Assembly (NCBI RefSeq): GCF_006345805.1
Contig: NC_042999.1
Location: forward strand, 71,796,001-71,860,000
Length of the DNA stretch: 64,000 nt
Direction of reading: 5' to 3'
Source of the DNA: Octopus sinensis
Taxonomy: Eukaryota
Positions 6,098 through 62,380 of the stretch are shown one piece after another (positions within the stretch are counted from its first letter, which is position 1; the number at the start of each line of letters is the position of its first letter). The notes beneath the pieces are model-generated. The model made no database searches, was not told the DNA's origin, and saw only the letters and a program-made list of their open reading frames with translations. Made by a program: the position numbers and the translations under genes.

Positions 6098-6149
<52 letters not shown>

Positions 6150-6150
6150 G
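5735..6150. repeat. Long interrupted (AT)n microsatellite
   Basis: Direct reading. It produces spurious IY-rich ORFs. Confidence 0.95.
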
Positions 6151-6367
6151 AGAGAGTGAGATATCTATATATCTATATGTTTCTATAGTAAAGAAAAATA
6201 AGTTGGCTAGCAGCAAGCTGTTTCGCCTCATACCGAAGGAATTAGAAATGGCAGTCAAAGACCGTTTTTTCCATTTCTATAAGTGGAGATTCCAAAAACG
6301 AAGGCCCTTGGGGCTCACATACACAAAACCGGAGTGGCAAATATACGAATTCAGTCACTTACCGTTA

Positions 6368-6439
6368 ATAGCGAACACGGTGTTTCTAGATCACAAACAT
6401 ATAAAAAAAGGGGAGTTTGAATTCCGTCATCAGCGCTAT
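6368..6439 (-). ncRNA. Type I hammerhead ribozyme fold, array copy 1
   Basis: AUAGCG-CUGAUGA-cggaauucaaac(16-nt loop)guuugugaucua-GAA-ACACCGUGU-U-CGCUAU. Predicted cleavage between + positions 6374 and 6373. Confidence 0.78.
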
Positions 6440-6921
6440 ATTCGACAGCTTTATCAATTGCCACCAGCCCTCACTTCTGACCCAGCGACATCAGATAGTG
6501 GGGGGAAGTGCGCAGATGTTAAAACCAAGTAACGACTGGGAACGTGAATTTTCCCTCCAAAATTCTGCCATGCGCGCCTTCTGGGTATCGTAATGGAATG
6601 AGGAATCCACATGGTAATACAATAAAAATGGTAAATAATTTTCCTGTGGTTTTTCATGTAACCAACAATTATTTACCGGTAAATTTCGGTATGTAAATAC
6701 GACAAAATAATTGTCAAGACCTTTGTAAGGTTCAGTATATAGTAAAGAAAAATAAGTTGGCTAGCAGCAAGCTGTTTCGCCTCATACCGAAGGAATTAGA
6801 AATGGCAGTCAAAGACCGTTTTTTCCATTTCTATAAGTGGAGATTCCAAAAACGAAGGCCCTTGGGGCTCACATACACAAAACCGGAGTGGCAAATATAC
6901 GAATTCAGTCACTTACCGTTA

Positions 6922-6993
6922 ATAGCGAACACGGTGTTTCTAGATCACAAACATATAAAAAAAGGGGAGTTTGAATTCCGTCATCAGCGCTAT
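6922..6993 (-). ncRNA. Type I hammerhead ribozyme fold, array copy 2
   Basis: Identical to copy 1. Confidence 0.78.
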
Positions 6994-7476
6994 ATTCGAC
7001 AGCTTTATCAATTGCCACCAGCCCTCACTTCTGACCCAGCGACATCAGATAGTGGGGGGAAGTGCGCAGATGTTAAAACCAAGTAACGACTGGGAACGTG
7101 AATTTTCCCTCCAAAATTCTGCCATGCGCGCCTTCTGGGTAATCGTAATGGAATGAGGAATCCACATGGTAATACAATAAAAATGGTAAATAATTTTCCT
7201 GTGGTTTTTCATGTAACCAACAATTATTTACCGGTAAATTTCGGTATGTAAATACGACAAAATAATTGTCAAGACCTTTGTAAGGTTCAGTATATAGTAA
7301 AGAAAAATAAGTTGGCTAGCAGCAAGCTGTTTCGCCTCATACCGAAGGAATTAGAAATGGCAGTCAAAGACCGTTTTTTCCATTTCTATAAGTGGAGATT
7401 CCAAAAACGAAGGCCCTTGGGGCTCACATACACAAAACCGGAGTGGCAAATATACGAATTCAGTCACTTACCGTTA

Positions 7477-7548
7477 ATAGCGAACACGGTGTTTCTGGAT
7501 CACAAACATATAAAAAAAGGGGAGTTTGAATTCCGTCATCAGCGCTAT
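7477..7548 (-). ncRNA. Type I hammerhead ribozyme fold, array copy 3
   Basis: As copy 1, but with G-C instead of G-U at the second position of stem II (tttctgga versus tttctaga on +). Confidence 0.8.
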
Positions 7549-8031
7549 ATTCGACAGCTTTATCAAATGCCACCAGCCCTCACTTCTGACCCAGCGACAT
7601 CAGATAGTGGGGGGAAGTGCGCAGATGTTAAAACCAAGTAACGACTGGGAACGTGAATTTTCCCTCCAAAATTCTGCCATGCGCGCCTTCTGGGTAATCG
7701 TAATGGAATGAGGAATCCACATGGTAATACAATAAAAATGGTAAATAATTTTCCTGTGGTTTTTCATGTAACCAACAATTACTTACCGGTAAATTTCGGT
7801 ATGTAAATACGACAAAATAATTGTCAAGACCTTTGTAAGGTTCAGTATATAGTAAAGAAAAATAAGTTGGCTAGCAGCAAGCTGTTTCGCCTCATACCGA
7901 AGGAATTAGAAATGGCAGTCAAAGACCGTTTTTTCCATTTCTATAAGTGGAGATTCCAAAAACGAAGGCCCTTGGGGCTCACATACACAAAACCGGAGTG
8001 GCAAATATACGAATTCAGTCACTTACCGTTA

Positions 8032-8103
8032 ATAGCGAACACGGTGTTTCTGGATCACAAACATATAAAAAAAGGGGAGTTTGAATTCCGTCATCAGCGC
8101 TAT
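8032..8103 (-). ncRNA. Type I hammerhead ribozyme fold, array copy 4 (5'-most on the minus strand)
   Basis: Same as copy 3. Array homology ends at 8110, 7 nt beyond stem I. Confidence 0.8.
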
Positions 8104-8149
8104 ATTCGACATATATACATACATATATATATATATACTTTGATTCTTT

Positions 8150-8263
8150 GATAGGGTTCGGCCATTATTGGCCCAGGCCATGTCTAACTTAATAGCACCA
8201 CCTGGTGCTTAATAGCACCACCTGGTGCTTAATAGCACCACCTGGTGACTTAATAGCACCACC
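8150..8263 (-). mobile_element. 3' UTR fragment of the CR1/L2-like LINE seen at 58030-60262, with a 20-bp unit repeated ~3.7 times
   Basis: ttggcccaggccatgtctaacttaatagcaccacctgg is shared with about 58063-58100. cttaatagcaccacctggtg starts at 8188, 8208 and 8228, with a partial copy at 8249. Confidence 0.75.
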
Positions 8264-18549: not shown

Positions 18550-18726
18550 ATATTCATTAAATATGAAGGAAGTACACGTGTTTCAGTATTTGAAGATTAC
18601 AATATATATATATATATATATCATCATCATCAGCGGACTTTAAACGATGATGATGATGATGTATATATATATATTGTAATCTTCAAATACTGAAACACGT
18701 GTACTTCCTTCATATTTAATGAATAT
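18550..18726. repeat. Long inverted repeat (hairpin)
   Basis: 54-bp arms 18550-18603 and 18673-18726 are exact reverse complements, extended inward by (AT)n and (CAT)n/(ATG)n around a ~16-nt spacer. Confidence 0.9.
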
Positions 18727-19382
18727 AAGTATTAACTACAGTATGATATAGTTAATGAAGTATATTATATACCCAGCTGGTAATTTTAGTTATATCCGTT
18801 GTGCAAACTGGTACCATGAGTCTATTGTCAGATATACTCATTAGGTTATTTTGGTATTATCTGAAATAGAATACCTGCATATCGATTAATTCCCCGAAAA
18901 TTGAATATTTTATCGGAAATACTTTGTATATTTATAGATAAATATATAAATATACGATAAATTAGACCCCAAAGTACGATATGTAAATGCATATAACGCT
19001 GAAGGGTTGCACCTGATTGATTTGGAAGTTTGTTTTCCCAAATCTTATATATATATGACAATAATTAAAGGTTTAGCAACAAGTTGCTTCACCACATACC
19101 GAAAAATTAGAAATAGCAGCCAAAAGACCGCTATTTCGTTTTCCTACAAAATATGTCTCCACAGATAACATTATTTATAACTCACATAGGTAATAAGAAG
19201 AAAAATAATGAAATCAAACAGTCTTCGATTAATTATGGATCCGTTTCTGGCTTAGAATTATAAAAATTCATTTGTTAACATAATATTTCGAGAATTATAA
19301 ATTTGAAAATGCATTTCTGATCAAGCACCATCAGAACATGACACAAGGTAGTCAGCATATCCACTCGTCTATATAAGTCTGG

Positions 19383-19467
<85 letters not shown>

Positions 19468-19474
19468 CATCATC

Positions 19475-22100
19475 ATCATCATCATCATTTAACGTCCGCT
19501 TTCCATGCTAGCATGGGTTGGACGGTTCAACTGGGGTCTGGGGAGCCCGAAAGCTGCACCAGTCCAGTCAGATCTGGCAGTGTTTCTACAGCTGGATGCC
19601 CTTCCTAACGCCAACCACTCCGAGAGTGTAGTGGGTGATTTTATGTGCCACCGACACAGGTGCCAGACGAGGCTGGCAAACGGCCACGCTCGGATGGTGT
19701 TTTTATGTGCCACCGACACAGGTGCCAGACGAGGCTGGCAGACGGCCACGCTCGGATGGTGTTTTTATGTGCCACCGACACAGGTGCCAGACGAGGCTGG
19801 CAGACGGCCACGCTCGGATGGTGTTTTTATGTGCCACCGACACAGGTGCCAGACGAGGCTGGCAGACGGCCACGCTCGGATGGTGTTTTTATGTGCCACC
19901 GACACAGGTGCCAGATGAGGCTGGCAAACGGCCACGATCGGATGGTGCTTGTTACGTGCCCACAGCACGGAGGCCAGTCGATGCGGTACTGGCTACGGCC
20001 ACGTTCGGATGGTTTTCTTATGTGCCACGTGCCACCGGCACTGGTACCACAAAGATACAAATCCCATTGATGTTCATCTATTTTGATTTGTTTTGATTTG
20101 ATTTTGATTTTGATTTTCACTTGCCTCAACAGGTCTTCACAAGTGTCACAAGAAGGAAGGTATGCACAGGTGGACTGACTACGTCCCAGGTAGAGGCCAT
20201 GGGTTATGGCCTGACTAGTCTTGCCGGGTCTTCGGATGGTGTTTTTATGTGCCACCGACACAGGTGCTAGATGAGGCTGGCGAACGGCCACGATCGGATG
20301 GTGTTTGTCATGTGCCCACCGCACTGACTACGGCACTGATGGATTCTTGTGTGCCACAGGCACTGGTACCACAAGATACAAATTCCATTGATGTTCATCT
20401 ATTTTGTCTATTTTGATTTGATTTGATTTGATTTTCACTTGCCTCAACCGGTCTTCACAAGTGTCACAAGAAGGAAGGTATGCACAGGTGGACTGACTAG
20501 TCTTGCCGGGTCTTCGGAAGGTGTTTTTATGTGCCACCGACACAGGTGCCAGATGAGGCTGGCGAACGGCCATGATCGGATGGTGTTTGTTACGTGCCCA
20601 CAGCACGGAGGCCGGTCGATGCGGAACTGGCTACGGCCACGTTCGGATGGTTCTCATGTGTGCCACCGGCACTGGTACCACAAAGTGTGTGCCACCGGCA
20701 CTGGTACCACAAAGATACAGATTCCATTGATGTTCATCTATTTTGATTTGTTTTGATTTGATTTGATTTTCACTTGCCTCAACAGGTCTTCACAAGTGTC
20801 ACAAGAAGGAAGGTATGCACAGGTGGACTGACTACGTCCCAGGTAGGGGCCATGGGTTATGGCCTGACTAGTCTTGCCGGGTCTTCGGATGGTGTTTTTA
20901 TGTGCCACCGACACAGGTGCTAGATGAGGCTGGCGAACGGCCACGATCGGATGGTGTTTGTCATGTGCCCACAGAACGGAGGCCAGTCGATGCGGTACTG
21001 GCTACGGCCACTTTCGGATGGTTTTCTCTTGTGTGCCACCGGCACTGGTACCACAAAGATACAGATTCCATTGATGTTCATCTATTTTGATTTGTTTTGA
21101 TTTGATTTTGATTTTGATTTTCACTTGCCTCAACAGGCCTTTGATTTTGATTTTCACTTGCCTCAACAGGCCTTCACAAGTATCACAAGGAGGAAGGTAT
21201 GCACAGGTGGACTGACTACGTCCCAGGTAGGGGCCATGGTTTATGGCCTGACTAGTCTTGCCGGGTCTTCGGAAGGTGTTTTTATGTGCCACCGACACAG
21301 GTGCTAGATGAGGCTGGCGAACGGCCACGACCGGATGGTGTTTGTTATGTGCCCACAGCACGATGGCCAGTGATGCGGTACTGACTACGGCCACGTTCGG
21401 ATGGATTCTTGTGTGCCACCGGCACTGGTACCACAAGCGGTACTGACTACGGCCAAGCGGTACTGACTACGGCCACGTTCGGATGGATTCTTGTGTGCCA
21501 CTGGCACTGGTACCACAAGGATACAAATTCCATTGATGTTCATCTATTTTGATTTGTTTTGATTTGATTTGATTTGATTTTCACTTGCCTCAGCAGGTCT
21601 TCACAAGTCGGAAGGTATGTACAGGTGGACTGACTACGTCCCAGGTAGGGCCCACGGGTTATGACCTGACTAGTCTTGCCGGGTCTTCGGATGGTGTTTT
21701 TATGTGCCACCATGTTCCCACAGCACGGAGGCCAGTCGATGCGGTACTGGCTACGGCCACGTTCGGATGGTTTTCTTGTGTGCCACAGGCACTGGTACCA
21801 CAAAGATACAAATTCCATTGATGTTCATCTATTTTGATTGATTTTCACTTGCCTCAGCAGGTCTTCACAAGTGTCACAAGAAGGAAGGTATGCACAGGTG
21901 GATCGACTACGTCCCAGGTAGGGGCCACGGGATATGGCCTGACTAGTCCTGCCGGGTCCTCTCATGCACAGCACACTTCCATAGGACTCGGTCTTCAGTC
22001 ATTTCCTTGGTGAGACCTAAAGTTCGAAGGTCGTGCTTCACCACCTCGTCCCAGGTTTTCCTGGGTCTACCTCTTCCACAGGTTCCCTCAACTGCTAGGG
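19475..22100 (-). mobile_element. 5'-truncated RTE LINE with a 3' UTR expanded by nested tandem repeats
   Basis: The minus strand near 22100-21960 encodes AVEGTCGRGRPRKTWDEVVKHDLRTLGLT (RTE C-terminus), and the element ends in a (GAT)n tail at about 19480. Five 62-bp units (19644, 19706, 19768, 19830, 19892) are followed by larger repeats containing (TTGAT)n. Confidence 0.85.
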
Positions 22101-27739: not shown

Positions 27740-28060
27740 GGTGATGGCGCTGATGATTGAATAGACCAATTTTTGCATGGAAGAGTCGATGGCATTCAAT
27801 GTGGTAAGAAAGAGATTGATTTTGTCGAACCTTTATCATCTGTCGTTTGATTTGTTCCTCTTCTCTTCTGGTGGCTTCTAAGATTTTGGTTCTGATGTTG
27901 ATGAAACACCGCTAGTTGGTACCGTCTCGGACTTGTGTCTCAAGCAATTTAAACTCAAGTCCAGTGGTTTTGAGAGTTGTTTTGAGTTAGTCTTTGTATC
28001 TTCGATGAGAGCAGCCCCGTGGTCTTTCCTCTGAAGTGAGCTCGCTGAATAAGACTTGAC
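27740..28060 (-). mobile_element. RTE-BovB-like LINE 3' remnant
   Basis: The minus strand gives ELTSEERPRGCSHRRYKD*LKTTLK...ECHRLFHAKIGLFNHQRHH, matching the BovB-type C-terminal G.R..G...RYKD.LK and C2H2-like motif. Confidence 0.65.
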
Positions 28061-30849: not shown

Positions 30850-32910
30850 GCTTGTTAAAAGCATTTGTTATTCATTCTCTCATTGGGGGGAATAATAATT
30901 ACAATTATTGTGGTCGGAAAAATAGAAATGTCACGTGGCGATAAGCCAAAACGAAATATGTTTGAAGAGGTTTCAAGTAAAACTGAAGGATCTACTTCAG
31001 ATACAGAGGCAGAATTAATTCCAAGTTTGCCGTCTGGCAGTACAAAAGAAAAGTCAAAGATAGTGTCAAAAGTATAATTGACGTACCGAGTGTGCAAAAA
31101 GAAAATAATAATGAAGAGAAAGACATTTTTGCATTAGCAGCCGGTGGGTAGAACCCGGCAACTCTCAACAAATAAAAATGATATAAGGAAGTACAATAAA
31201 ATAATAGAAAAAGATGGAAACGTGGCAAAAGTGCAACCCCCTGAAAGACTACTACAACAAGAAAAGAAAAAGGAAATACTTTACAAACCCTATAATTTAA
31301 AAAGTCGTAAAATTGATAAAATGTCCGAAGGGACAGCAGAAAAAATATTTGAAAGTCATCTGGAGTGATATTAATTACATCACAAGAGGAAATAAATTTG
31401 GAACGGTACAGGTGAGGATGAGAAATGCGCAGCAACACTCAGTGGAAACGCTGAAGACAAGATGCGGGGCTTATCCCCATGTACATGGGGATGAGGACAT
31501 CAAGAATAAGAATTAGGAGGATTCCTCAAGAGATTGATCCTATGTGGGTGGTGACGGCTGTGGTAATGAACCAGGAGGAGAAAATTACGCTCCCCTACGC
31601 TTCAGCCCCGAAGCATGGGGTAGCGAGTTGTCCAGAAAGCGAACTGGACTGGACAACATTTTAATACAAGCGGAGCCCAAACTCCTAGAAGATATTTCAG
31701 AGAAAATTGAAATAGAAGAGGAGGTCCTCATAGTCTTTGTGGAGGGCCGAAAACCCCGATGTTTTCAATGTGGCGAGTTAGGCCACATTCGGAATGAATA
31801 TAAAGCAGAAAAGGAAGAGGAGGAGGAGAAAGAAGTGGAAGAGAAGAAGGAGAAACAGACAACTAACAAACGAAAAGTTCAGCCGACTACACAACCGAAA
31901 GCAACGACGTCAGAACCGAGGCTAAAAAACACAGCAAAAATGGAAAGAGATGAACGAGGTTTGGTGGCAGTCAACACAGACGACGTGGATCTAATGAGAT
32001 AGCAAAAACTCATAAAATCAGCGATACGCAACGATGAGATCTCTGACAAGTATAAGAACCATGATATTTTACGAAATCTGCGAAAAAACACATAATATCT
32101 TGGCGAACAAATATAGAAAGACTGTTGATCCAATGAGGCTGGTTTTTCATTCCTCTATCTTTGAAGAACTACCGGCTCCGATCTCACGAGATAAAAAAGA
32201 AGGGGTGGAATCTCCTCCTCCTACTGAAAACAAAGAAAAGTAATTTAAGGCAAAATTTTTATGGCGATTCACATTTGTTTAAATGTACACGGCCTGATGT
32301 CGAGCTGGAAGCAAGGACAGTTCCTAAATGACATCAGGTCGCGGGATTTGAATGTAATTGTTGCTGCAGAAACCCGGTTGAACGGGCCAAGAGATCTGCT
32401 CTCTCTGCTGAATAGCTACGAGAAATACGTTTCTCCGTGTCGAGCGACAGGTGGGGGTGGTTTGTTGGTCCTATTAAAAAGAAACCGAGTTTCCGAGAAA
32501 AAGTTGATTTCTTTCTGATCCAGGAGGCAGCTTGGTCGTTCTGGATTTGACTTTCAGTTGCGGTAAGAGGATCAGGCTGGTTGCGATTTATGCACCCAAT
32601 CAGGATGGTCCAAAAAGTAAATATTTCCGTGATGTAGGGAAATTTTTAGTCGCGAAACATTCTTTAGTTTTGCTAGAAGACTTTAACACATTCTACGATA
32701 TGCGCACTGATTGTGTTGGCTCAAAACCAGATAGAACATGTAACTATGGCTTTCGGGATCTACTAGGCCATTTTCAGCTAGCAGACCCATATAGGCTGGA
32801 ACACCCGCACGCTCCACTGTGGACGTGGTCAAATAGCGACGGATCTTCCCGATTATATATAGATAGAATCTTGATTAGAAAGGAGACTGGTTACTGCCTT
32901 TCGATTTAAC
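30850..32910 (+). mobile_element. Tx1/L1-like LINE: decayed ORF1 (CCHC) plus APE domain, 3'-truncated
   Basis: KPRCFQCGELGHIR, MAIHICLNVHGL...VAAETR, AIYAPN...LLEDFN, WTWSN...YIDRIL. Confidence 0.85.
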
Positions 32911-33364: not shown

Positions 33365-33716
33365 ATGTATCTATTCTATAAGTGGTTGTTAATAAGCTAG
33401 TTTCCCAACCACATCGTTCCGGATTCAGAATTCAACTACGTTGCACCCTACGCGTGTGTCTTCTACTCTAGCCAATGCATTTGGTAAACGGAAGCTGAAA
33501 GAAGCCCGTCGTGTATATATATATATATATATTATATAGATAAGAAAGTTTGTTTGGTAAAGCACGTGGGTGAATATATAAGAAAATAGTAAAGTGTGAA
33601 AAAACGACAGAAGGCTTAAATGTTAAAAAATATATATATTTGTGTCAAAATGTCTGGAGAATATTGGAAAAATTTTTTTTCCTTTCCTTAAAATGACATA
33701 ATTTAAAAAATTTTTA

Positions 33717-33756
33717 AAGAAATTACCGGTTTCGCGTGTAGCTTTTCAAATTTCTT
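33717..33756 (-). ncRNA. Hammerhead-like motif with a U3-A8 core (inverted arm copy)
   Basis: Exact reverse complement of 34691-34730. Confidence 0.55.
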
Positions 33757-34548
33757 GTGACGTTATGTTTATATTGCATGGAATTATCGTTGTTTTTATT
33801 TCCAGGAGATTTCTAAATAAGGGGAGGTAGTGAGTGATTTTTTCCGGTGTAGGGGAGATAATCGCTTAAAATCTTTAAGAAAAGTTCAACACAACAACAC
33901 ACCTTCCCCGAAAATACTACCTTACATATCTACATACAACCCCAGAAACAAAGAAGCCTTCACCATCATCACCCAGAATTTACCAATACTTCATAAAAAC
34001 CCAAAATTAAAGGAAATTCTAAACATACACCATTAAAAGCTACAAACAGCCTAAATCACTTAAAAAGATTCTCACAAAGGCAAAATTGTCTTCTAAAATT
34101 ACGGATGCAAAAGTAAAAAAATGTGGTAGATCGAACTGTGCAACATGTCCTAACCTATTGGAAGGATCAGAATTCTTCTTTAAAGAGGGACAGAAATTTA
34201 AGATCAAATCTAACTTTACTTGTGCCTCTGAAAACATAATTTATGTTATTAAATGCTCGGGCTGCCACCAAGACTACGTGGGTTCCACGGGACTATCACT
34301 CAGGCGCAGATGCACACTGCATCGACAACAGATTGCATTCCCAGAATATAGAATGATACCTTTTAGTGAGCACATTGAGAAATGCGCAAAGCAACTACTG
34401 CCACAATTTTTATCTTCCCATTTTACCAATGTGCTTTCGGATCATCAACACAAATGAGACTGAACAAGGAACATTCTTCATTGAAAAGTACAAACCCAGA
34501 CTCAACCATCCGAACATACTGACACAGAGAAATTAACAAGGAAATGGG

Positions 34549-34581
<33 letters not shown>

Positions 34582-34690
34582 GCGATTATCTCCCCTACAC
34601 CGGAAAAAATCACTCACTACCTCCCCTTATTTAGAAATCTCCTGGAAATAAAAACAACGATAATTCCATGCAATATAAACATAACGTCAC

Positions 34691-34730
34691 AAGAAATTTG
34701 AAAAGCTACACGCGAAACCGGTAATTTCTT
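34691..34730 (+). ncRNA. Hammerhead-like motif with a U3-A8 core in the PLE 3' UTR
   Basis: aagaaau-UUGAAAA-gc(uacac)gc-GAA-ACCGGU-A-auuucuu: 7-bp stem I, palindromic ACCGGU stem III, GUA triplet. Confidence 0.6.
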
Positions 34731-34876
34731 TAAAAATTTTAAAATTATGTCATTTTAAGGAAAGGAAAAAAAATTTTTCCAATATTCTCCAGACATTTTG
34801 ACACAAATATATATATTTTTTAACATTTAAGCCTTCTGTCGTTTTTTCACACTTTACTATTTTCTTATATATATAT

Positions 34877-45989: not shown

Positions 45990-47200
45990 GAGTTTATCTA
46001 AAAGGATTTATAAAAGAGTTATCTTTTATTGGCTCTATATTCCTGATGCTCTATCAGCGCTAATTAGTTTGCCATTTCAGAGGTAGCTTGTCCAGCCCGG
46101 AACTATAAATGCCTGGCAATCAAGAGTCAATAAAATCTTGGAAGGCCTGTTTAACAGCATCGTTGGAATTAATTTTTTTCCTATGAAAATGTTATCCAAA
46201 TTCTGGAAGGAGTGATAGTCAGTAGGGGCAAGACCAAGTGAATATGGTGGATGATGGAGAATTTCCAACTCCGACTCTGGTAGTTTCGCCAATGTCATTT
46301 TTCCGATGTGTAGTCTGGTATTTGTCTTGAAATAAAATAGGGGTGGATCTGTTGACCAATCTAGACTGTTTTTTGTAAGTTTCTGCATCTTTTGGTCCAG
46401 TTGGCTGCAGTATACTTCGGTGGTGATTGATGAGCCAGGTTTAATGAAATCATAGTGGATCACACCTGCGCCAGACCACCAATCAAACACCATCGGCTTC
46501 TTTTGTTGAATTTTGCTTTTTGGGCAGTGTTTTGGTGATTCATTTTTGTCCACCCATTGTGGTGAACGTTTACAGTTGTATTGAATCCATTTCTCATTAT
46601 ATGTTACAATTCGATTCAAAAATTATTCATTTTTGTGACGAGAAAGTAGCATAATGCAGGCTTCCAAACCGTGCTGTTTCTGATGTTCATTGAGTTCATG
46701 TGAAACCCAATTATCCAGTTTTTTCACTTTACCGATTTGAACTAGGTGAGTCAATATTGTTTGCTTGCTAATACCAAACAACAACAATAATTCACGGACA
46801 CATTGAGATGGATCTGACTCAACGGTGGCTTTCAGTTCGTCATTATCCACCTTTGTTCCTGGCCGACCGCGTTGCTCATTTGAGAGGTCAAAGTTACCAG
46901 AACGAAATTTTGCAAACCAATTTCATGCTGTCTGCTGTGTAATAACATTAGAATGAAATACTCCATTAATATTCCCGAGCTGTCTGGGATGCTGTATTTC
47001 CAAGAAAGAACTTATATTTCAAAGCTGTACGAATTTCCGACTTATTCATCTCTAAACAAAAATAACCAAAAACGATTTATAAATACTTTATAAAGTGCAA
47101 AATGAGTTAGAATAAAGAAATAGATGTATCAGCTTTCTAACAATAAATAAAGATTGTCAAAATATAATAATGGCGCAAAATAAGTAGCTGTCAAATTTTA
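45990..47200 (-). mobile_element. Decayed mariner (DD34D) transposon
   Basis: DNDELKATVESDPSQ...GKVKKLDNWVSHEL, RIVTYNEKWIQY, and HPPYSLGLAPTDYH (YSPDL motif). Frameshifts are present, and TIRs were not confidently located. Confidence 0.9.
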
Positions 47201-58029: not shown

Positions 58030-60261
58030 ACTTAGAATAACTTAGAAAGGTTTTGGCCAGTATTGGCCCAGGCCATGTCTAACTTAATAGCACCACCTGG
58101 CGAAGTCTTTCAGTTCAGGATTTGGGCACCAAGGCCCATTCGAGCAGAGAGTTATTGTTTGCGGAGACATATCCGGCTGTGGGTGGTTTGTCCGGTACTG
58201 TTTGAAGGAATTTGTCCAAAGACTTCTTGAATTTTGTGTGGTCAGTTTCTTTTTTGACGTGTCCTGGTGTAATGTTGAAGAGAGCGGGTCCAATTGAGGT
58301 GAAATAGTTGTGCCGTATTGTCGTTATGTGATGCGATTTAGATTTTTTTTGTGGACGGATGGCACGTGGTCCAAGTCTTGGATGCATTTTGAAGGTGATG
58401 CCAACATCATTCGGACAGTGCTGATGGAATATTTTCCACATCATACAGATAATGTAGCGTTCACGTCGTCGTTGGAGTGAATACAATTTCAGCTTCTCTA
58501 GTCTACCCCAGTAGTCAAGGTCTGACATGCCATCTATCTTTTTTGTGATTGACCTTTGGGGAGCTTCAATTCTCATAATATTTTACTTTGTGTAGGGAGA
58601 CCACAGTGGACAGCAGTATTCAAGGTGGGGTCGGGCAAAAGTGGAGAAGAGAAGGATAATAGCGTGGGAATCTCTCGACTGGAAGGTTCTGAGAATCCAG
58701 GAACACATTCTGCGGGCCATGTCAACTTTGCTACTTATATCTGTAGCCCAGCTTATGTTGTTGTCCACTGTTACTCCCAGGTCTCTGATGTTGTTGGATG
58801 CCATGAGAATTTCTCCAGAAGGAAGAGAGTATGGGAGTTTCAGAGCGTCCTCCCTTCCAAAGTGGATCAGTTCGAATTTGTCTTCATTTAGCAACATGTT
58901 ATTCTTTTCCGCCCATTGGACAACAACCAGTAGGTCTGACTGAAGGTTTATTCGGTCATCTACGCCATTGATGACCTTCTGGAGCTTGGAATCATCAGCG
59001 AAGGTTCTGATGTTACTGTGTTTGATGGTGTCAGTAATATCATTTATGTAGATGATGAAGAGAAGTGGGCCCAATACAGTGCCTTGTGGGACACCACTGC
59101 TGACTTTGGCTGGGCTGGATTTGACTCCTTCGACTACAACATGTTGGGTTCTGTTAGCCAGGAAGCACTTGATCCACTGCAGCAGCTTTCCAGTGACACC
59201 AATATTGGACAGCTTTCTCAGAAGGATCTTATGATCAACCCTGTCAAAGGCCTTGCTGAAATCAAGGTAGATGACATCAGTGTTGGAACCCTCTCCCAAG
59301 GCTCTCAAAATGTCATCAAAATGATGCAGTAGCTGCGTCAAGCAATCTCTCCCATTACGGAATCCATGCTGGTTGGGGTTTAGCATATTATGACTCTCAA
59401 GGAAGTGAGTCATACGCGATCTCAGTACCCTCTCAAATACCTTGATGATATGAGAGGTGAGTGAGATTGGACGGTAATTCACGGCAAGCGATTTGTTTCC
59501 TTTTTTGAAAACTGGGACAACAGACTGGGATAGAAGGTCTTCTGGTATATATCCAGCATCCAGTGAGTTCCGCCACAGATTGGCTAGAGGGGGTGCAAGT
59601 TGGTTTTGACACATCTTCAAGACACAAGCAGGGAACCTATCGGGACCTACTGCTGAATTATGCTTCATTTCCTTTATTGCTGCTAAGACATCAGGAGCGC
59701 CAAATGTTATGTCCGATAAAGTGTATTGGGGAGTAACATCACTGATACAGCCCAGATCAGTCATATCAGGATTGCTGAAAACAGAGAAATATTGTTTCTG
59801 CAATATCTCTCCCATGGTTTTGGCATTGTCTTGAAGAGTACCATTTTCATCAATCAGAGGGCCAACAGTAGAACCAGTGACTCTGTGTTTTTTTGCAAAT
59901 GAAAAGAACACTTTGGGATTGAGTTTGATCTTCTCAATGGCCCAGGCCTCTTAAGCTCTTCGCTGACTATTGATGATAGACATCATGTTGTTTTGGAGTT
60001 TATGTTTTTTAATCTCTAGCGACGAGATGGCAGTCAGGTTGGTGTGTTGCTGTTGACAGTATTTCAGCATGTTGATCTTTTTGTTGATTCTTTTAATTTT
60101 CCTTATGAGAGATTTTCTATTTCTAGGGATTCGACACTTAGATTTGTTTGCATATGTTAATGGGGTGTGTCTTGCACATATGTTCGTGATGGTGTCTACA
60201 AGTGACTGCCAGGGCTTTTTGATGTTAGTGGGTGTGTATGTGTGCGTGAAGGACCAATCGA

Positions 60262-60262
<1 letters not shown>
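58030..60262 (-). mobile_element. 5'-truncated CR1/L2-group LINE ORF2 (RT) plus 3' UTR
   Basis: ORF segments 59951-60262, 58583-59911 and 58115-58576 share one frame, broken only by two TAA codons. Motifs NYRPISLTS, QHGFR, YLDFSKAFD, GVPQGTVLGPLLF, FADD. Confidence 0.95.
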
Positions 60263-61464
<1,202 letters not shown>

Positions 61465-62380
61465 ACACAATATACAGTGGGCTGAGGACAACAACATGCA
61501 GTTTATTGCAGGTAAGTTCCAGGCCCTGCGCTACTGGCACACAAAGGTAAATGACGTGAAGACTGGATACACTGGCCCAGGAAGAATTGCAATCCCTGAG
61601 TCAAAATCAGTGCGTGACCTGGGCATTGAAATGAGCAATGATGCATCTTTCCAAATGCATATTGCTAATCTGGTGATAAAATGCAGACGGCTAGCTGGAT
61701 GGATTCTCCGAACTTTCAGAACAAGAGAGAAGGAGACACTGATGGTCCTATGGAAAACATTTGTCCTCAGCCGCTTGTACTACTGCTCCCAACTTTGGTC
61801 ACCACACAATATAAAACAAACAGCAGAACTCGAAGCAACTCAGAGAAGCTACACAAAGAAAATCGTCTCAATGCAAAATGTCAGCTACTGGGAAAGACTG
61901 AAGGTATTAAACCTCTTCTCCCTGGAGCGGAGGCGGGAGAGATATGCAGTGATATACATCTGGAAAATCCTGGAGGGTCTTGTCCCAAACTTTGGCATTC
62001 AAAGTTACTCCAACCGCAGAACGGGGCGCCGCTGCGTGGTGCCAAGGATTCCAACATCACCATCAAAATACAGGTCCAGATACTGCAACAGCTTGGGTTT
62101 CAGAGGACCACAGCTCTTTAATATCCTCCCTAAATGCCTGAGAGATTTACATGGTGTGGATGTGGGTTCCTTTAAAACTAAACTGGATCTCTTCTTGTTG
62201 GGAGTCCCAGATGAACCTACCTCACGACAGGAGACACGGATGCGCGCAGCAGCATCGAACTCCCTTGTTGATCAAGTGCCACGTATCAGAGGTGGATTCA
62301 CAAACTAGTGTAGCTCATTCAGCGGTGGTGCCCCAGCATGGCCGCGGCCTTCGGGCTAAAACATTTTAAAGGATTTAATG
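61465..62380 (+). mobile_element. 5'-truncated CR1/L2-group LINE 3' end (second family)
   Basis: 270-aa open frame with [21 protein letters not shown] and LERRRER, followed by the tail ggtggtgccccagcatggcc. Confidence 0.92.

What the first reader, a model, noticed from the sequence alone, without database searches (positions are those of the whole stretch)
6184..8110. Tandem 555-bp array in which every unit carries a hammerhead ribozyme: candidate retrozyme-like circRNA element
Seen: four copies on the minus strand of AUAGCG-CUGAUGA-[stem II]-GAA-ACACCGUGU-U-CGCUAU, spaced 555, 555 and 554 nt. They have an intact CUGANGA/GAAA core, a perfect 6-bp stem I, a GUU cleavage triplet and a near-palindromic stem III (ACAC-C-GUGU) that cannot close as a monomer. 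Known: metazoan non-LTR retrozymes are tandem non-coding units with type I hammerheads and palindromic helix III; they self-cleave as dimers, give monomeric circular RNAs and are thought to be mobilised by Penelope-like elements. Inferred: a multimeric transcript would be cut into ~555-nt monomers (cuts at 8038/8037, 7483/7482, 6928/6927, 6374/6373). I do not know of a described family with this sequence in cephalopods, but I could not search.
Basis: partly seen in the sequence, partly recalled or inferred. Interest (0 to 1): 0.95.

Follow-up and report, generated by a model that had tools for sequence, protein, structure and literature searches.

The report
Hammerhead-bearing tandem repeat, retrozyme-like, in cephalopod DNA
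A young 3.5-copy tandem repeat of a 555-base non-coding unit carries one slightly off-consensus hammerhead self-cleaving RNA motif per unit and looks like a cephalopod member of the known animal "retrozyme" mobile elements, but cleavage and circular RNA remain untested.

Summary
Minus strand 8111..6184 is a head-to-tail array of 3.47 units of 555 nt, 99.5-100% identical. Four identical-core hammerhead motifs predict cuts at 8038/8037, 7483/7482, 6928/6927 and 6374/6373.

The motif is rarer than chance: about 0.001 per shuffled 64-kb window. The sense-strand unit is unusually structured as a circle (z = -4.5). Two hammerhead domains co-fold into a double hammerhead.

A second, old copy (18971-19335, about 70% identical) also lies near a (TA)n tract. 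It keeps extended stem I through three compensatory pair changes, so the fold was under selection.

- Helix II starts with a C.A apposition at 10.1/11.1, which is a rejection criterion in canonical hammerhead searches.
- Two of the four copies weaken the next pair to G.U.
- Rfam hammerhead models give no match at any threshold.

The array lies inside a (TA)n microsatellite. A Penelope-like endonuclease remnant lies 26 kb away.

Best reading (confidence about 0.55): a non-autonomous element of the non-LTR retrozyme kind, a new member of a known kind. Main rival (0.28): the same element with a dead or relic ribozyme. Catalysis, circular RNA and genome-wide copy number could not be tested.

The parts
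6184..8111 (-). Tandem array: 74 nt (unit positions 482-555), three full units (8037..7483, 7482..6928, 6927..6374), then 190 nt (unit positions 1-190). Units are numbered from the predicted cleavage site.
   Evidence: Only 4 variable sites in the whole array.
8032..8103 (-). Hammerhead-like motif 1, with predicted cut between 8038 and 8037. The helix II pair next to the C.A apposition is G-C.
7477..7548 (-). Hammerhead-like motif 2, with predicted cut 7483/7482. Layout: AUAGCG 7548-7543, CUGAUGA 7542-7536, helix II 7535-7496, GAA 7495-7493, ACACCGUGU 7492-7484, U17 7483, CGCUAU 7482-7477.
6922..6993 (-). Hammerhead-like motif 3, with predicted cut 6928/6927. The helix II pair is weakened to G.U (C to T at unit position 541).
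6368..6439 (-). Hammerhead-like motif 4, with predicted cut 6374/6373. It carries the same G.U variant.
7318..7387 (-). Best-conserved block of the unit (positions 96-165 after the cut). It folds into two hairpins and is a candidate recognition or initiation module for a reverse transcriptase. Equivalent copies lie at 7873-7942, 6763-6832 and 6209-6278.
   Evidence: 80% identity to the old copy over 71 nt, E=6e-11. An exact shared pattern occurs 5 times in the window, 0 expected. Both copies fold into the same two-hairpin shape, z=-2.8 and -4.0. The functional role is inferred by analogy with PMC11167929.
5733..6146 (.). (TA)n microsatellite flanking the 3' end of the array (sense orientation).
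6147..6183 (-). 37-nt non-unit spacer (GAAACATATAGATATATAGATATCTCACTCTCTCTCG) between the array end and the pure (TA)n. It is either degenerate target sequence or a PLE-type 'tail'; this is undecided.
   Evidence: The tail idea comes from PMC8557442 and PMC11167929 and was not tested.
8112..8145 (.). TA-rich microsatellite remnant flanking the 5' end of the array.
18971..19335 (-). Old, diverged copy of the same family. It covers unit positions 434-555 then 1-247, about 70% identical. The relic hammerhead lies at 19284..19232: stem I AUUAUG/CAUAAU; GAA, A15.1, U16.1 and C17 are kept; CUGAUGA has decayed to UUAACAA.
19383..19467 (.). (TA)n microsatellite about 50 nt upstream of the old copy.
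33877..34570 (+). Context, not part of the array: the 3' fragment of a canonical Penelope-like element ORF (GIY-YIG endonuclease part, ORF 34086-34457), ending in poly(A).
   Evidence: 2877 homologues. The long ones (about 745 aa) carry RVT_1 plus a C-terminal GIY-YIG domain. The fragment's own Pfam GIY-YIG match is sub-threshold, E=0.015.

Best explanation
The array is a recently inserted or amplified copy of a non-autonomous, non-coding retroelement of the animal non-LTR retrozyme kind.

Shown by computation:
- Each 555-nt unit carries a type I hammerhead domain on the minus strand.
- Stem I is 6 bp, then a UAA/UAA internal loop, then 4-5 bp.
- The core is CUGAUGA...GAA.
- Helix II spans 40 nt. 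Its first layer is a C.A apposition, followed by 3 bp, an internal loop and 5 bp.
- Helix III is weak and near-palindromic.

Inferred life cycle:
- A minus-strand transcript runs through several units.
- Neighbouring hammerheads pair through ACACCGUGU into a double hammerhead and cut after GUU.
- This releases 555-nt monomers with 5'-OH and 2',3'-cyclic phosphate ends.
- A host RtcB-type tRNA ligase could circularise the monomers.
- Monomeric, circular or multimeric RNA is copied by the reverse transcriptase of a resident Penelope-like element.
- The copy is inserted at (TA)n DNA nicked by that element's GIY-YIG endonuclease.

The 3' end of the array (unit position 190) lies in the unit's only UAUAUA. 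It sits just downstream of the conserved two-hairpin block. I take that block to be the RT recognition or initiation region.
For: - Exact array and motif.
- Motif frequency in shuffles is about 0.001 per window.
- As a circle, the sense strand folds to -149.8 kcal/mol against -124.3 +/- 5.6 for shuffles, z=-4.5. The antisense strand gives only z=-2.6.
- The hammerhead fold lies within about 2-3 kcal/mol of the 81-nt MFE (-10.0 constrained fold; -9.1 for the exact hand-drawn structure; MFE -12.0).
- Two hammerhead domains co-fold at -31.6 kcal/mol into the domain-swapped double hammerhead, against 2 x -12.0 for monomers. Helix III alone costs +2.1.
- No coding capacity. The longest ORF is 109 aa, on the antisense strand, with no homologue among 5.8 billion proteins. 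There is no tRNA-like part.
- The family is dispersed. A second copy, about 70% identical, lies at 18971-19335, about 50 nt from a (TA)n tract.
- In that copy, 3 of the 6 stem I pairs changed on both sides and all 6 still pair. The probability is at most 1.3e-3 under independent mutation.
- The UAA/UAA internal loop and an outer 4-5-bp helix are also kept, with an added A-U pair.
- GAA, A15.1, U16.1 and H17 are kept.
- Both flanks of the array are TA microsatellite.
- A remnant of a canonical PLE ORF lies in the window.

Literature:
- Metazoan retrozymes are low-GC tandem repeats with type I hammerheads and weak palindromic helix III, and some cleave as dimers. The axolotl Amex2 motif has a U.U mismatch at the base of helix II and still cleaves (PMC7229834).
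- Unit lengths range from 51 to 972 bp, and 75% of families have at most 7 repeats (bioRxiv 10.64898/2026.07.22.740005).
- (TA)n is a preferred insertion target of Naiad PLEs, with a similar bias proposed for Neptune PLEs. PLEs also form partial tandems (PMC8557442).
- A PLE RT initiates internally about 85-92 nt 3' of the hammerhead cut and prefers AT-rich targets (PMC11167929).
Against: - No Rfam hammerhead match at any threshold.
- The motif fails a descriptor that requires a 10.1-11.1 pair. [quoted passage not shown] They also note that U.U, not C.A, is the best-tolerated mismatch (PMC3088659).
- Two of the four copies weaken the adjacent pair to G.U.
- GUU is a permitted but less favoured triplet (general hammerhead enzymology, from my own knowledge).
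- The old copy has lost CUGAUGA, and helices II and III are not conserved in it. Covariation therefore supports stem I only.
- Only two loci are available. The host genome could not be searched.
- The array's 5' end lies 74 nt upstream of a cut site, not at one.
- The derived T at unit position 541 is shared by two adjacent units. This needs a heterogeneous template or a later DNA-level duplication.
- No homology was found between the unit and three PLE contigs related to the window's remnant.
- There are no expression data.
Confidence: 0.55

Rival explanations
1. Relic ribozyme. The repeat descends from a hammerhead-bearing PLE or retrozyme lineage and is (or was) mobilised by a PLE. The present hammerhead (C.A at 10.1/11.1, G.U next to it, GUU) is catalytically dead or irrelevant. 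The array arose by PLE-style tandem insertion of an unprocessed multimeric RNA, or by DNA-level duplication. No monomeric circular RNA is made.
For: - Canonical descriptor and Rfam both fail.
- A mispair at 10.1/11.1 is a rejection criterion, and such hits are common in repeats (PMC3088659).
- In vitro, hammerhead mutants did not affect insertion by a PLE, and no RNA-seq reads ended at its cut site (PMC11167929).
- PLE hammerheads show low activity in vitro (PMC4209133).
- The array's 5' end is not at a cut site.
- The variant shared between adjacent units fits DNA-level duplication.
Against: - All 13 invariant core letters are intact in four copies of a very young array.
- Stem I was maintained by compensatory change during family divergence.
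- The double hammerhead is the predicted dimer MFE.
- A natural retrozyme hammerhead with a mismatch at the base of helix II does cleave (PMC7229834).
Confidence: 0.28
2. Ordinary minisatellite or tandem duplication, in which a hammerhead-like string occurs by chance and was simply copied with the unit.
For: - The four motifs are one event.
- At about 0.001 hits per 64 kb, a genome of a few Gb (size assumed, not known) would hold some tens of chance hits, so a wide scan could meet one.
- There is no Rfam support.
- One weak, unrelated descriptor hit exists at 27750.
Against: - The motif sits on the more structured strand.
- An independent, about 70%-identical copy keeps stem I through 3 double changes, plus the internal loop, the outer helix, GAA and UH.
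- Both copies lie in or near (TA)n.
- The helix geometry matches canonical type I motifs as described in PMC4209133: 6 layers before the internal loop of helix I and 4 before that of helix II.
Confidence: 0.07
3. Assembly artefact. The copy number, or the tandem arrangement itself, is produced by mis-assembly of a dispersed repeat next to microsatellites. This overlaps the other readings rather than excluding them, so the confidences are not meant to sum to 1.
For: PLE-type tandem or inverted structures and microsatellites are known to trouble assemblies (PMC8557442). The units are nearly identical.
Against: The units carry 4 distinguishing variants in a consistent order, and one unit has a 1-nt deletion. 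A collapsed or duplicated consensus would not show these. Both junctions with the flanks are unique sequence.
Confidence: 0.05

Closest known systems
Metazoan non-LTR retrozymes (Cervera & de la Pena 2020, PMC7229834; review PMC7761336; vertebrate survey bioRxiv 10.64898/2026.07.22.740005)
   Same: Head-to-tail repeats of a short non-coding unit; one type I hammerhead per unit; GC below 50%; no LTR, PBS or PPT; highly self-paired predicted RNA; weak palindromic helix III with dimer potential; few repeats per locus; co-occurrence with PLEs.
   Different: The 555-nt unit exceeds the 150-450 nt first described, though it is inside the 51-972 bp range of the 2026 survey. Helix II spans 40 nt with an internal loop and starts with a C.A apposition. 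There is no Rfam match. Cleavage and circular RNA are not shown. I found no paper describing such elements in cephalopods.
Axolotl HHR_Amex2 and newt satellite 2 hammerheads
   Same: Weak helix III; activity expected mainly as a double hammerhead in tandem transcripts. Amex2 has a mismatch (U.U) at the base of helix II (PMC7229834).
   Different: The mismatch here is C.A, which is expected to be tolerated less well than U.U (PMC3088659). Helix II is far longer. The unit sequence is unrelated.
[quoted passage not shown]
   Same: Type I topology; an unpaired nucleotide right after A9 is a PLE hallmark, and the C here can be read that way; long helix II; palindromic helix III; dimer dependence; AT-rich or (TA)n insertion sites; insertions that end a fixed distance 3' of the hammerhead.
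   Different: There is no RT-EN ORF between successive hammerheads (555-nt spacing, non-coding). Helix I is the canonical 6 bp with an internal loop, not 4-5 bp. There is an additional unpaired A before G12. No homology to the PLE contigs I could fetch.
Plant LTR retrozymes (PMC4918200)
   Same: Non-autonomous retroelements whose hammerheads excise a monomer that becomes a circular RNA; comparable size (600-1000 nt).
   Different: Plant elements have type III hammerheads inside LTRs, PBS and PPT, 4-bp target-site duplications and GC above 55%. None of these is present here.
Schistosome Sm-alpha / W-element and cave-cricket pDo500 hammerhead satellites
   Same: Repetitive, transcribed, non-coding units of a few hundred nt, each with a type I hammerhead.
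   Different: Those motifs fit the canonical consensus (G10.1-C11.1, short helix II) and are detected by Rfam. Sm-alpha is SINE-like, whereas no tRNA-like part is found here.

Membership tests
Metazoan non-LTR retrozyme | Head-to-tail tandem repeats of a short unit (150-450 bp classically; 51-972 bp in the 2026 survey) | tested here: met
   3.47 units of 555/555/554 nt.
Metazoan non-LTR retrozyme | One type I hammerhead per unit with the invariant core letters (C3 U4 G5 A6 N7 G8 A9, G12 A13 A14, A15.1-U16.1, H17) and an open helix I | tested here: met
   The exact string is present in all four copies.
Metazoan non-LTR retrozyme | Canonical helices next to the core, in particular a 10.1-11.1 base pair | tested here: not met
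   C opposite A at 10.1/11.1. The motif is not found when that pair is required. This is a rejection criterion in PMC3088659, but a U.U precedent exists in an active retrozyme hammerhead (PMC7229834).
Metazoan non-LTR retrozyme | Match to curated hammerhead covariance models (Rfam hammerhead families) | tested here: not met
   No hammerhead family matched at gathering score or at E<=10, even on 99 nt.
Metazoan non-LTR retrozyme | Non-coding, GC below 50%, no LTR/PBS/PPT | tested here: met
   GC is 0.40. The longest ORF is 109 aa, antisense, without homologues. The flanks are microsatellite, not LTRs.
Metazoan non-LTR retrozyme | Monomer RNA predicted to be stable and highly self-paired | tested here: met
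   Circular MFE -149.8 kcal/mol, z=-4.5 against shuffles; antisense z=-2.6.
Metazoan non-LTR retrozyme | Dispersed copies at independent sites in the genome | tested here: inconclusive
   One further old copy in the 64-kb window. The genome itself cannot be searched with these tools, and the collection scans were negative or irrelevant.
Metazoan non-LTR retrozyme | Structure conserved by covariation among family members | tested here: inconclusive
   Stem I: 3 of 6 pairs are compensatory and the outer helix and loop are kept. Helices II and III and the CUGAUGA box are not kept in the one diverged copy available.
Metazoan non-LTR retrozyme | Self-cleavage of transcripts at the predicted site | not testable with these tools
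   Only thermodynamic support exists: the double hammerhead is the dimer MFE.
Metazoan non-LTR retrozyme | Monomeric linear and circular RNA in tissues | not testable with these tools
   No transcriptome access.
Metazoan non-LTR retrozyme | Co-occurrence with Penelope-like elements in the genome | tested here: met
   The ORF 34086-34457 is homologous to the C-terminal GIY-YIG part of about 745-aa RT+EN proteins. It is only a poly(A)-ended fragment.
Metazoan non-LTR retrozyme | Sequence relatedness of the unit to the pseudo-LTR of a resident PLE | tested here: inconclusive
   No similarity to three PLE contigs related to the remnant. No full PLE of the host was available.
PLE pseudo-LTR hammerhead (autonomous Penelope-like element) | Hammerheads flank an RT plus GIY-YIG ORF (spacing about 3 kb) | tested here: not met
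   Spacing is 555 nt with no ORF.
Plant LTR retrozyme | Type III hammerheads inside LTRs, with PBS and PPT | tested here: not met
   Helix I is the open helix (type I). There are no terminal repeats other than the units themselves.

The most novel reading that the evidence does not exclude
A cephalopod-specific retrozyme family whose hammerhead naturally carries a non-Watson-Crick C.A layer at 10.1/11.1 and a long, interrupted helix II. It would be active only as a double hammerhead or with help from a PLE protein. It would yield abundant circular RNAs of about 555 nt, larger than typical animal retrozyme circles, in cephalopod tissues. Its two-hairpin block at +96..+165 would be the RT recognition and initiation signal that targets insertion to (TA)n.
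Probability: 0.2. Interest if true: 0.55.

Novelty: new member of a known kind. Interest (0 to 1): 0.4.

Why it matters
If the motif cleaves, several things follow.
- Retrozymes, and their small circular RNAs, would extend to cephalopods. The papers I could search describe none there.
- It would add a natural hammerhead with a C.A layer at the most conserved helix II position. That is useful for defining what the ribozyme tolerates and why standard models miss such copies.
- The locus is a clean, very young insertion inside a (TA)n tract with defined ends. It could help test how Penelope-like elements mobilise non-autonomous RNAs: internal initiation, the role of the conserved hairpins, and tandem formation.

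If it does not cleave, it is a typical 'cryptic' hammerhead in a repeat, of interest only for annotation.

Tried and rejected
- Rfam on the whole window at gathering score, on 3.5 kb at E<=10 and on 99 nt at E<=10. No hammerhead matched; only microsatellite 'miRNA' noise appeared.
- TRF missed the array because its longest period is 500.
- Fishing for other copies with the 109-aa antisense ORF as a protein query found nothing.
- Exact-pattern scans:
  - The conserved-block pattern gave 0 matches in metagenome contigs and 0 in viral contigs.
  - The hammerhead pattern gave 7 metagenome matches. They show no stem I complementarity, five fall into two groups of near-identical sequence, and they look like chance hits in unrelated, probably bacterial, contigs.
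- The descriptor hit at 27750 (+) shares GCGCTGATGA..GAAT with the unit. Its surroundings are not homologous and its helices are GU-rich, so I treated it as chance.
- nhmmer with the unit found no third copy in the window.
- SINE-like origin: no tRNA-like sequence. T5-T7 runs in the sense strand argue against Pol III transcription through the array (inference).
- An inverted 5'-truncated copy next to the array, typical of PLEs, was not seen; only microsatellite self-complementarity appeared.
- RNAalifold on the conserved block was uninformative because of an alignment shift. Single-sequence folds were used instead.
- The GIY-YIG ORF gave nothing in Pfam at the default threshold or in the word-indexed protein search. 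It was resolved only by the exhaustive HMMER search.
- The PLE contigs L008-L010 show no homology to the unit and no Rfam hammerhead.
- Lunse et al. 2017 (PLE hammerhead dimers) is not held in the library.
Full report
**1. What is there**

On the minus strand, 8111..6184 is a head-to-tail array. It runs 74 nt (unit positions 482-555, numbered from the predicted cleavage site), three full units (8037..7483, 7482..6928, 6927..6374; 555, 555 and 554 nt), and a final 190 nt (positions 1-190). TRF did not list it only because its longest period is 500.

Only four sites vary:
- position 256 is G in the first unit and A in the next two;
- the third unit has a 1-nt deletion at position 341;
- position 471 is T, then A, A;
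- position 541 is C, C, then T, T.

The 72-nt string AUAGCG-CUGAUGA-(40 nt)-GAA-ACACCGUGU-U-CGCUAU occurs at 8103..8032, 7548..7477, 6993..6922 and 6439..6368. My own descriptor puts the cuts after 8038, 7483, 6928 and 6374.

**2. Anatomy of the motif**

The 13 invariant hammerhead letters are present: C3-A9, G12-A14, A15.1, U16.1, H17.

It has 6 perfect pairs, a symmetric UAA/UAA internal loop, then 5 more pairs (G-C, C-G, U.G, G.U, U-A).

Helix II spans 40 nt:
- a C opposite an A directly next to the core;
- then G-C, G-C, A-U;
- a 3x3 internal loop;
- five pairs (CAAAC/GUUUG);
- a 16-nt U-rich loop.

Helix II alone folds at -6.3 kcal/mol, or -3.9 in the two copies where position 541 turns the first G-C into G.U.

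Helix III (ACACCGUGU) can close as 3 bp plus a triloop, but at +2.1 kcal/mol. It is weak rather than impossible.

If the C.A is counted as the 10.1/11.1 layer, four layers precede the internal loop of helix II and six precede that of helix I. This matches the 4-bp and 6-bp geometry described for canonical metazoan type I motifs (PMC4209133). That is an observation from the sequence; its meaning is inferred. The C can also be read as the unpaired nucleotide after A9 that is typical of PLE hammerheads (PMC4209133). An unpaired A before G12 would then remain.

**3.

- Rfam's hammerhead models give no match at gathering score on the window, at E<=10 on 3.5 kb, or at E<=10 on a 99-nt slice.
- With a descriptor that demands a 10.1-11.1 pair, the motif is not found.
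- Perreault et al. treated any mispair next to the core as grounds for rejection. They remarked that the rejected hits were mainly cryptic mutant hammerheads in repeats, and that U.U is the best-tolerated mismatch at this position (PMC3088659).
- Against that, an axolotl retrozyme hammerhead with a U.U mismatch at the base of helix II does cleave, better as a dimer (PMC7229834).
- A PLE hammerhead was active only with its protein present (PMC11167929).

Activity of this motif is therefore open.

**4. Chance**

In 3000 dinucleotide-preserving shuffles of the window, the strict descriptor (stem I >=6, II >=3 after an allowed apposition, III >=3) hit 3 times, about 0.001 per 64 kb. The loose descriptor hit 34 times (first run).

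The four copies are one event. At this rate a genome of a few Gb (size assumed, not known) would hold some tens of chance hits, so the motif alone does not settle the matter.

**5. RNA structure**

- As a circle, the sense-strand unit folds to -149.8 kcal/mol against -124.3 +/- 5.6 for shuffles (z=-4.5). The antisense strand gives z=-2.6.
- The hammerhead fold of an 81-nt slice lies within about 2-3 kcal/mol of its MFE: -10.0 for the constrained fold and -9.1 for the exact hand-drawn structure, against -12.0.
- Two hammerhead domains co-fold at -31.6 kcal/mol into the domain-swapped double hammerhead, with an intermolecular helix III (a central C.C) and stems I formed in trans. Two monomers give 2 x -12.0.

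**6. A second family member**

BLAST, nhmmer and local alignment find one more copy at 18971-19335 on the minus strand. It covers unit positions 434-555 then 1-247 at about 70% identity.

Its hammerhead region is well anchored on both sides.
- Stem I is AUUAUG/CAUAAU instead of AUAGCG/CGCUAU. Three of six pairs changed on both sides and all six still pair. The probability is at most 1.3e-3 for any per-site divergence from 0.2 to 0.5.
- The UAA/UAA internal loop is identical. The outer helix is kept, with an added A-U pair and a U.G to U-A change.
- GAA, A15.1, U16.1 and position 17 (C) are kept.
- CUGAUGA reads UUAACAA (four transitions). Helices II and III are not kept.

My reading is that this is an old insertion of a sister subfamily, whose closing helix was under selection while the family was active and whose core has since decayed. 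It argues strongly against a chance motif. It cannot show conservation of the catalytic core.

**7. Conserved block and ends**

The best-conserved part of the unit is positions 96-165 (80% over 71 nt, E=6e-11). A 24-nt degenerate pattern from it occurs five times in the window and never in shuffles. In both copies it folds into the same two hairpins (z=-2.8 and -4.0).

The array ends at unit position 190, inside the unit's only TATATA. It is followed by a 37-nt spacer and 414 bp of (TA)n. The 5' end abuts a TA-rich tract at 8112-8145. The old copy lies about 50 nt from another (TA)n.

Relevant properties of PLEs from the literature:
- They form partial tandems. (TA)n is a preferred insertion target of Naiads, with a similar bias proposed for Neptune PLEs. 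A 30-40-bp tail is often present (PMC8557442).
- A purified PLE nicks AT-rich DNA and starts reverse transcription internally, about 85-92 nt 3' of its hammerhead cut, in a stem-loop region that also holds the protein-binding signal (PMC11167929).

By analogy, I infer that the two-hairpin block is the RT recognition or initiation module and that position 190 marks the start of cDNA synthesis. This was not tested.

**8. PLE in the neighbourhood**

The ORF 34086-34457 had no Pfam match at the default threshold and no word-index homologue. The exhaustive search found 2877 homologues. Many are about 745 aa, with the match at their C-terminus. [quoted passage not shown] This is the canonical PLE architecture.

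The window fragment (33877-34570) ends in poly(A). It sits at the centre of a 300-nt-arm inverted repeat. It shows that PLEs were expressed in this lineage; it is not the partner of the array.

Three PLE contigs related to it share no sequence with the unit.

The best named relative of a LINE RT in the window is from Argonauta hians (58% identity). That is consistent with a cephalopod host, but I could not name the species.

**9. How the array formed**

Positions 256 and 471 could be single mutations in one unit. The derived T at position 541 (the old copy has C) is shared by two adjacent units and is not at a CpG. A single rolling-circle copy of one circular RNA followed by independent mutation does not explain it. 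Possible explanations:
- the template was a heterogeneous multimer;
- the RT switched templates;
- a unit was duplicated later at the DNA level.

The 5' end lies 74 nt upstream of a cut site, so the template's 5' end was not made by the ribozyme.

**10. Comparison and verdict**

The locus meets the genomic criteria of animal non-LTR retrozymes: tandem short non-coding units, one type I hammerhead core per unit, low GC, no LTR/PBS/PPT, a structured RNA, and PLE co-occurrence. Its size and repeat number fall inside the range of the 2026 survey (bioRxiv 10.64898/2026.07.22.740005).

It fails two formal hammerhead tests: the 10.1-11.1 pair and the Rfam models. The functional criteria (cleavage, circular RNA) cannot be tested here.

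Confidences:

| Reading | Confidence |
|---|---|
| Retrozyme-type element with a working, dimer-dependent hammerhead | 0.55 |
| Same element with a relic ribozyme | 0.28 |
| Chance motif in an ordinary repeat | 0.07 |
| Assembly artefact (overlaps the others, so the figures do not sum to 1) | 0.05 |

I found no paper describing such elements in cephalopods. However, type I hammerhead repeats are reported from molluscs to arthropods (PMC7229834). This is therefore a new member of a known kind, of moderate interest.

Noticed in passing
window 33574-34872: A 694-nt 3' fragment of a canonical Penelope-like element ORF (GIY-YIG part, ORF 34086-34457), ending in a poly(A) run of about 27 nt. It sits exactly at the centre of an inverted repeat with arms of about 300 nt (33574-33876 and 34571-34872, 98-99% complementary). 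The junctions read ...CGCTTAAAA | insert | TTTTAAGCG.... It looks like a LINE-mediated retrocopy of a PLE transcript inserted into the middle of a foldback element.
   Followed up: partly
L009:1231-1270 (ENA metagenome contig; its PLE part aligns with the window's PLE remnant, and its EN protein is 74% identical to the remnant's ORF): About 270 nt downstream of the PLE ORF end, and between two TA tracts, lies CGCUAA-CUGACGA-AAACAUUUUG-GAA-A-CCGG-U-U-UUAGCG. It has a perfect 6-bp stem I, an intact core, a palindromic CCGG helix III and U17, but only an AAA/UUU helix II with an unpaired G before G12. The extra nucleotide sits at the same place as in the array's motif. There is no sequence homology to the 555-nt unit.
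   Followed up: partly
L008:2569-2587: A Logan contig with a full 745-aa PLE ORF ends in ...ACCTGATGAGCCG, which looks like the start of a hammerhead box cut off by the contig end.
   Followed up: no
window 8188-8263: A 20-nt tandem repeat (CTTAATAGCACCACCTGGTG, 3.8 copies, 98% matches) lies about 45 nt beyond the TA tract that flanks the 5' end of the array. Its relation to the array is unknown.
   Followed up: no
window 27750-27830 (+): A loose hammerhead-descriptor hit (stem I 5 bp, largely G.U; helix II 3 bp; helix III 2 bp). It shares GCGCTGATGA..GAAT with the array motif but is not otherwise homologous to the unit. It is probably chance.
   Followed up: yes
window 18550-18726: A near-perfect inverted repeat (68-nt arms, 99% complementary, 41 nt apart) with (CAT)n/(ATG)n at its centre. 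A related ...AGCGGACGTTAAATGATGATG... end occurs at 19470-19520 next to the (TA)n of the old copy. It may be a SINE-like element with an (ATG)n tail.
   Followed up: no
window 19634-21475: A GC-rich (about 50%) block with a 62-nt tandem repeat (6.3 copies, 19634-20028) and further 20-33-nt repeats. It stands out from the window's 31-38% GC background.
   Followed up: no
window 58115-62308: LINE reverse-transcriptase remnants on opposite strands (58583-59911 minus, RVT_1 E=2e-31, best named relative Argonauta hians at 58%; 61496-62308 plus). They are separated by a 1.2-kb (AT)n tract (60261-61462).
   Followed up: partly
window 31544-32909 and 46077-46619: A LINE ORF1-like zinc-knuckle ORF plus an AP-endonuclease-like ORF (no Pfam match for the latter), and a mariner-type transposase remnant (PF01359, E=3e-20). 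The window is a transposon- and microsatellite-rich region without an obvious host gene.
   Followed up: partly
window 7048-7067 (unit positions 434-453) and 19316-19335: Both family copies keep a small hairpin: UCUGA...UCAGA in the young copy and UCUGAU...AUCAGA in the old one. It contains CUGAUG followed by GAA(G/A). It resembles half a hammerhead box but lacks A9 and a proper GAAA context.
   Followed up: partly
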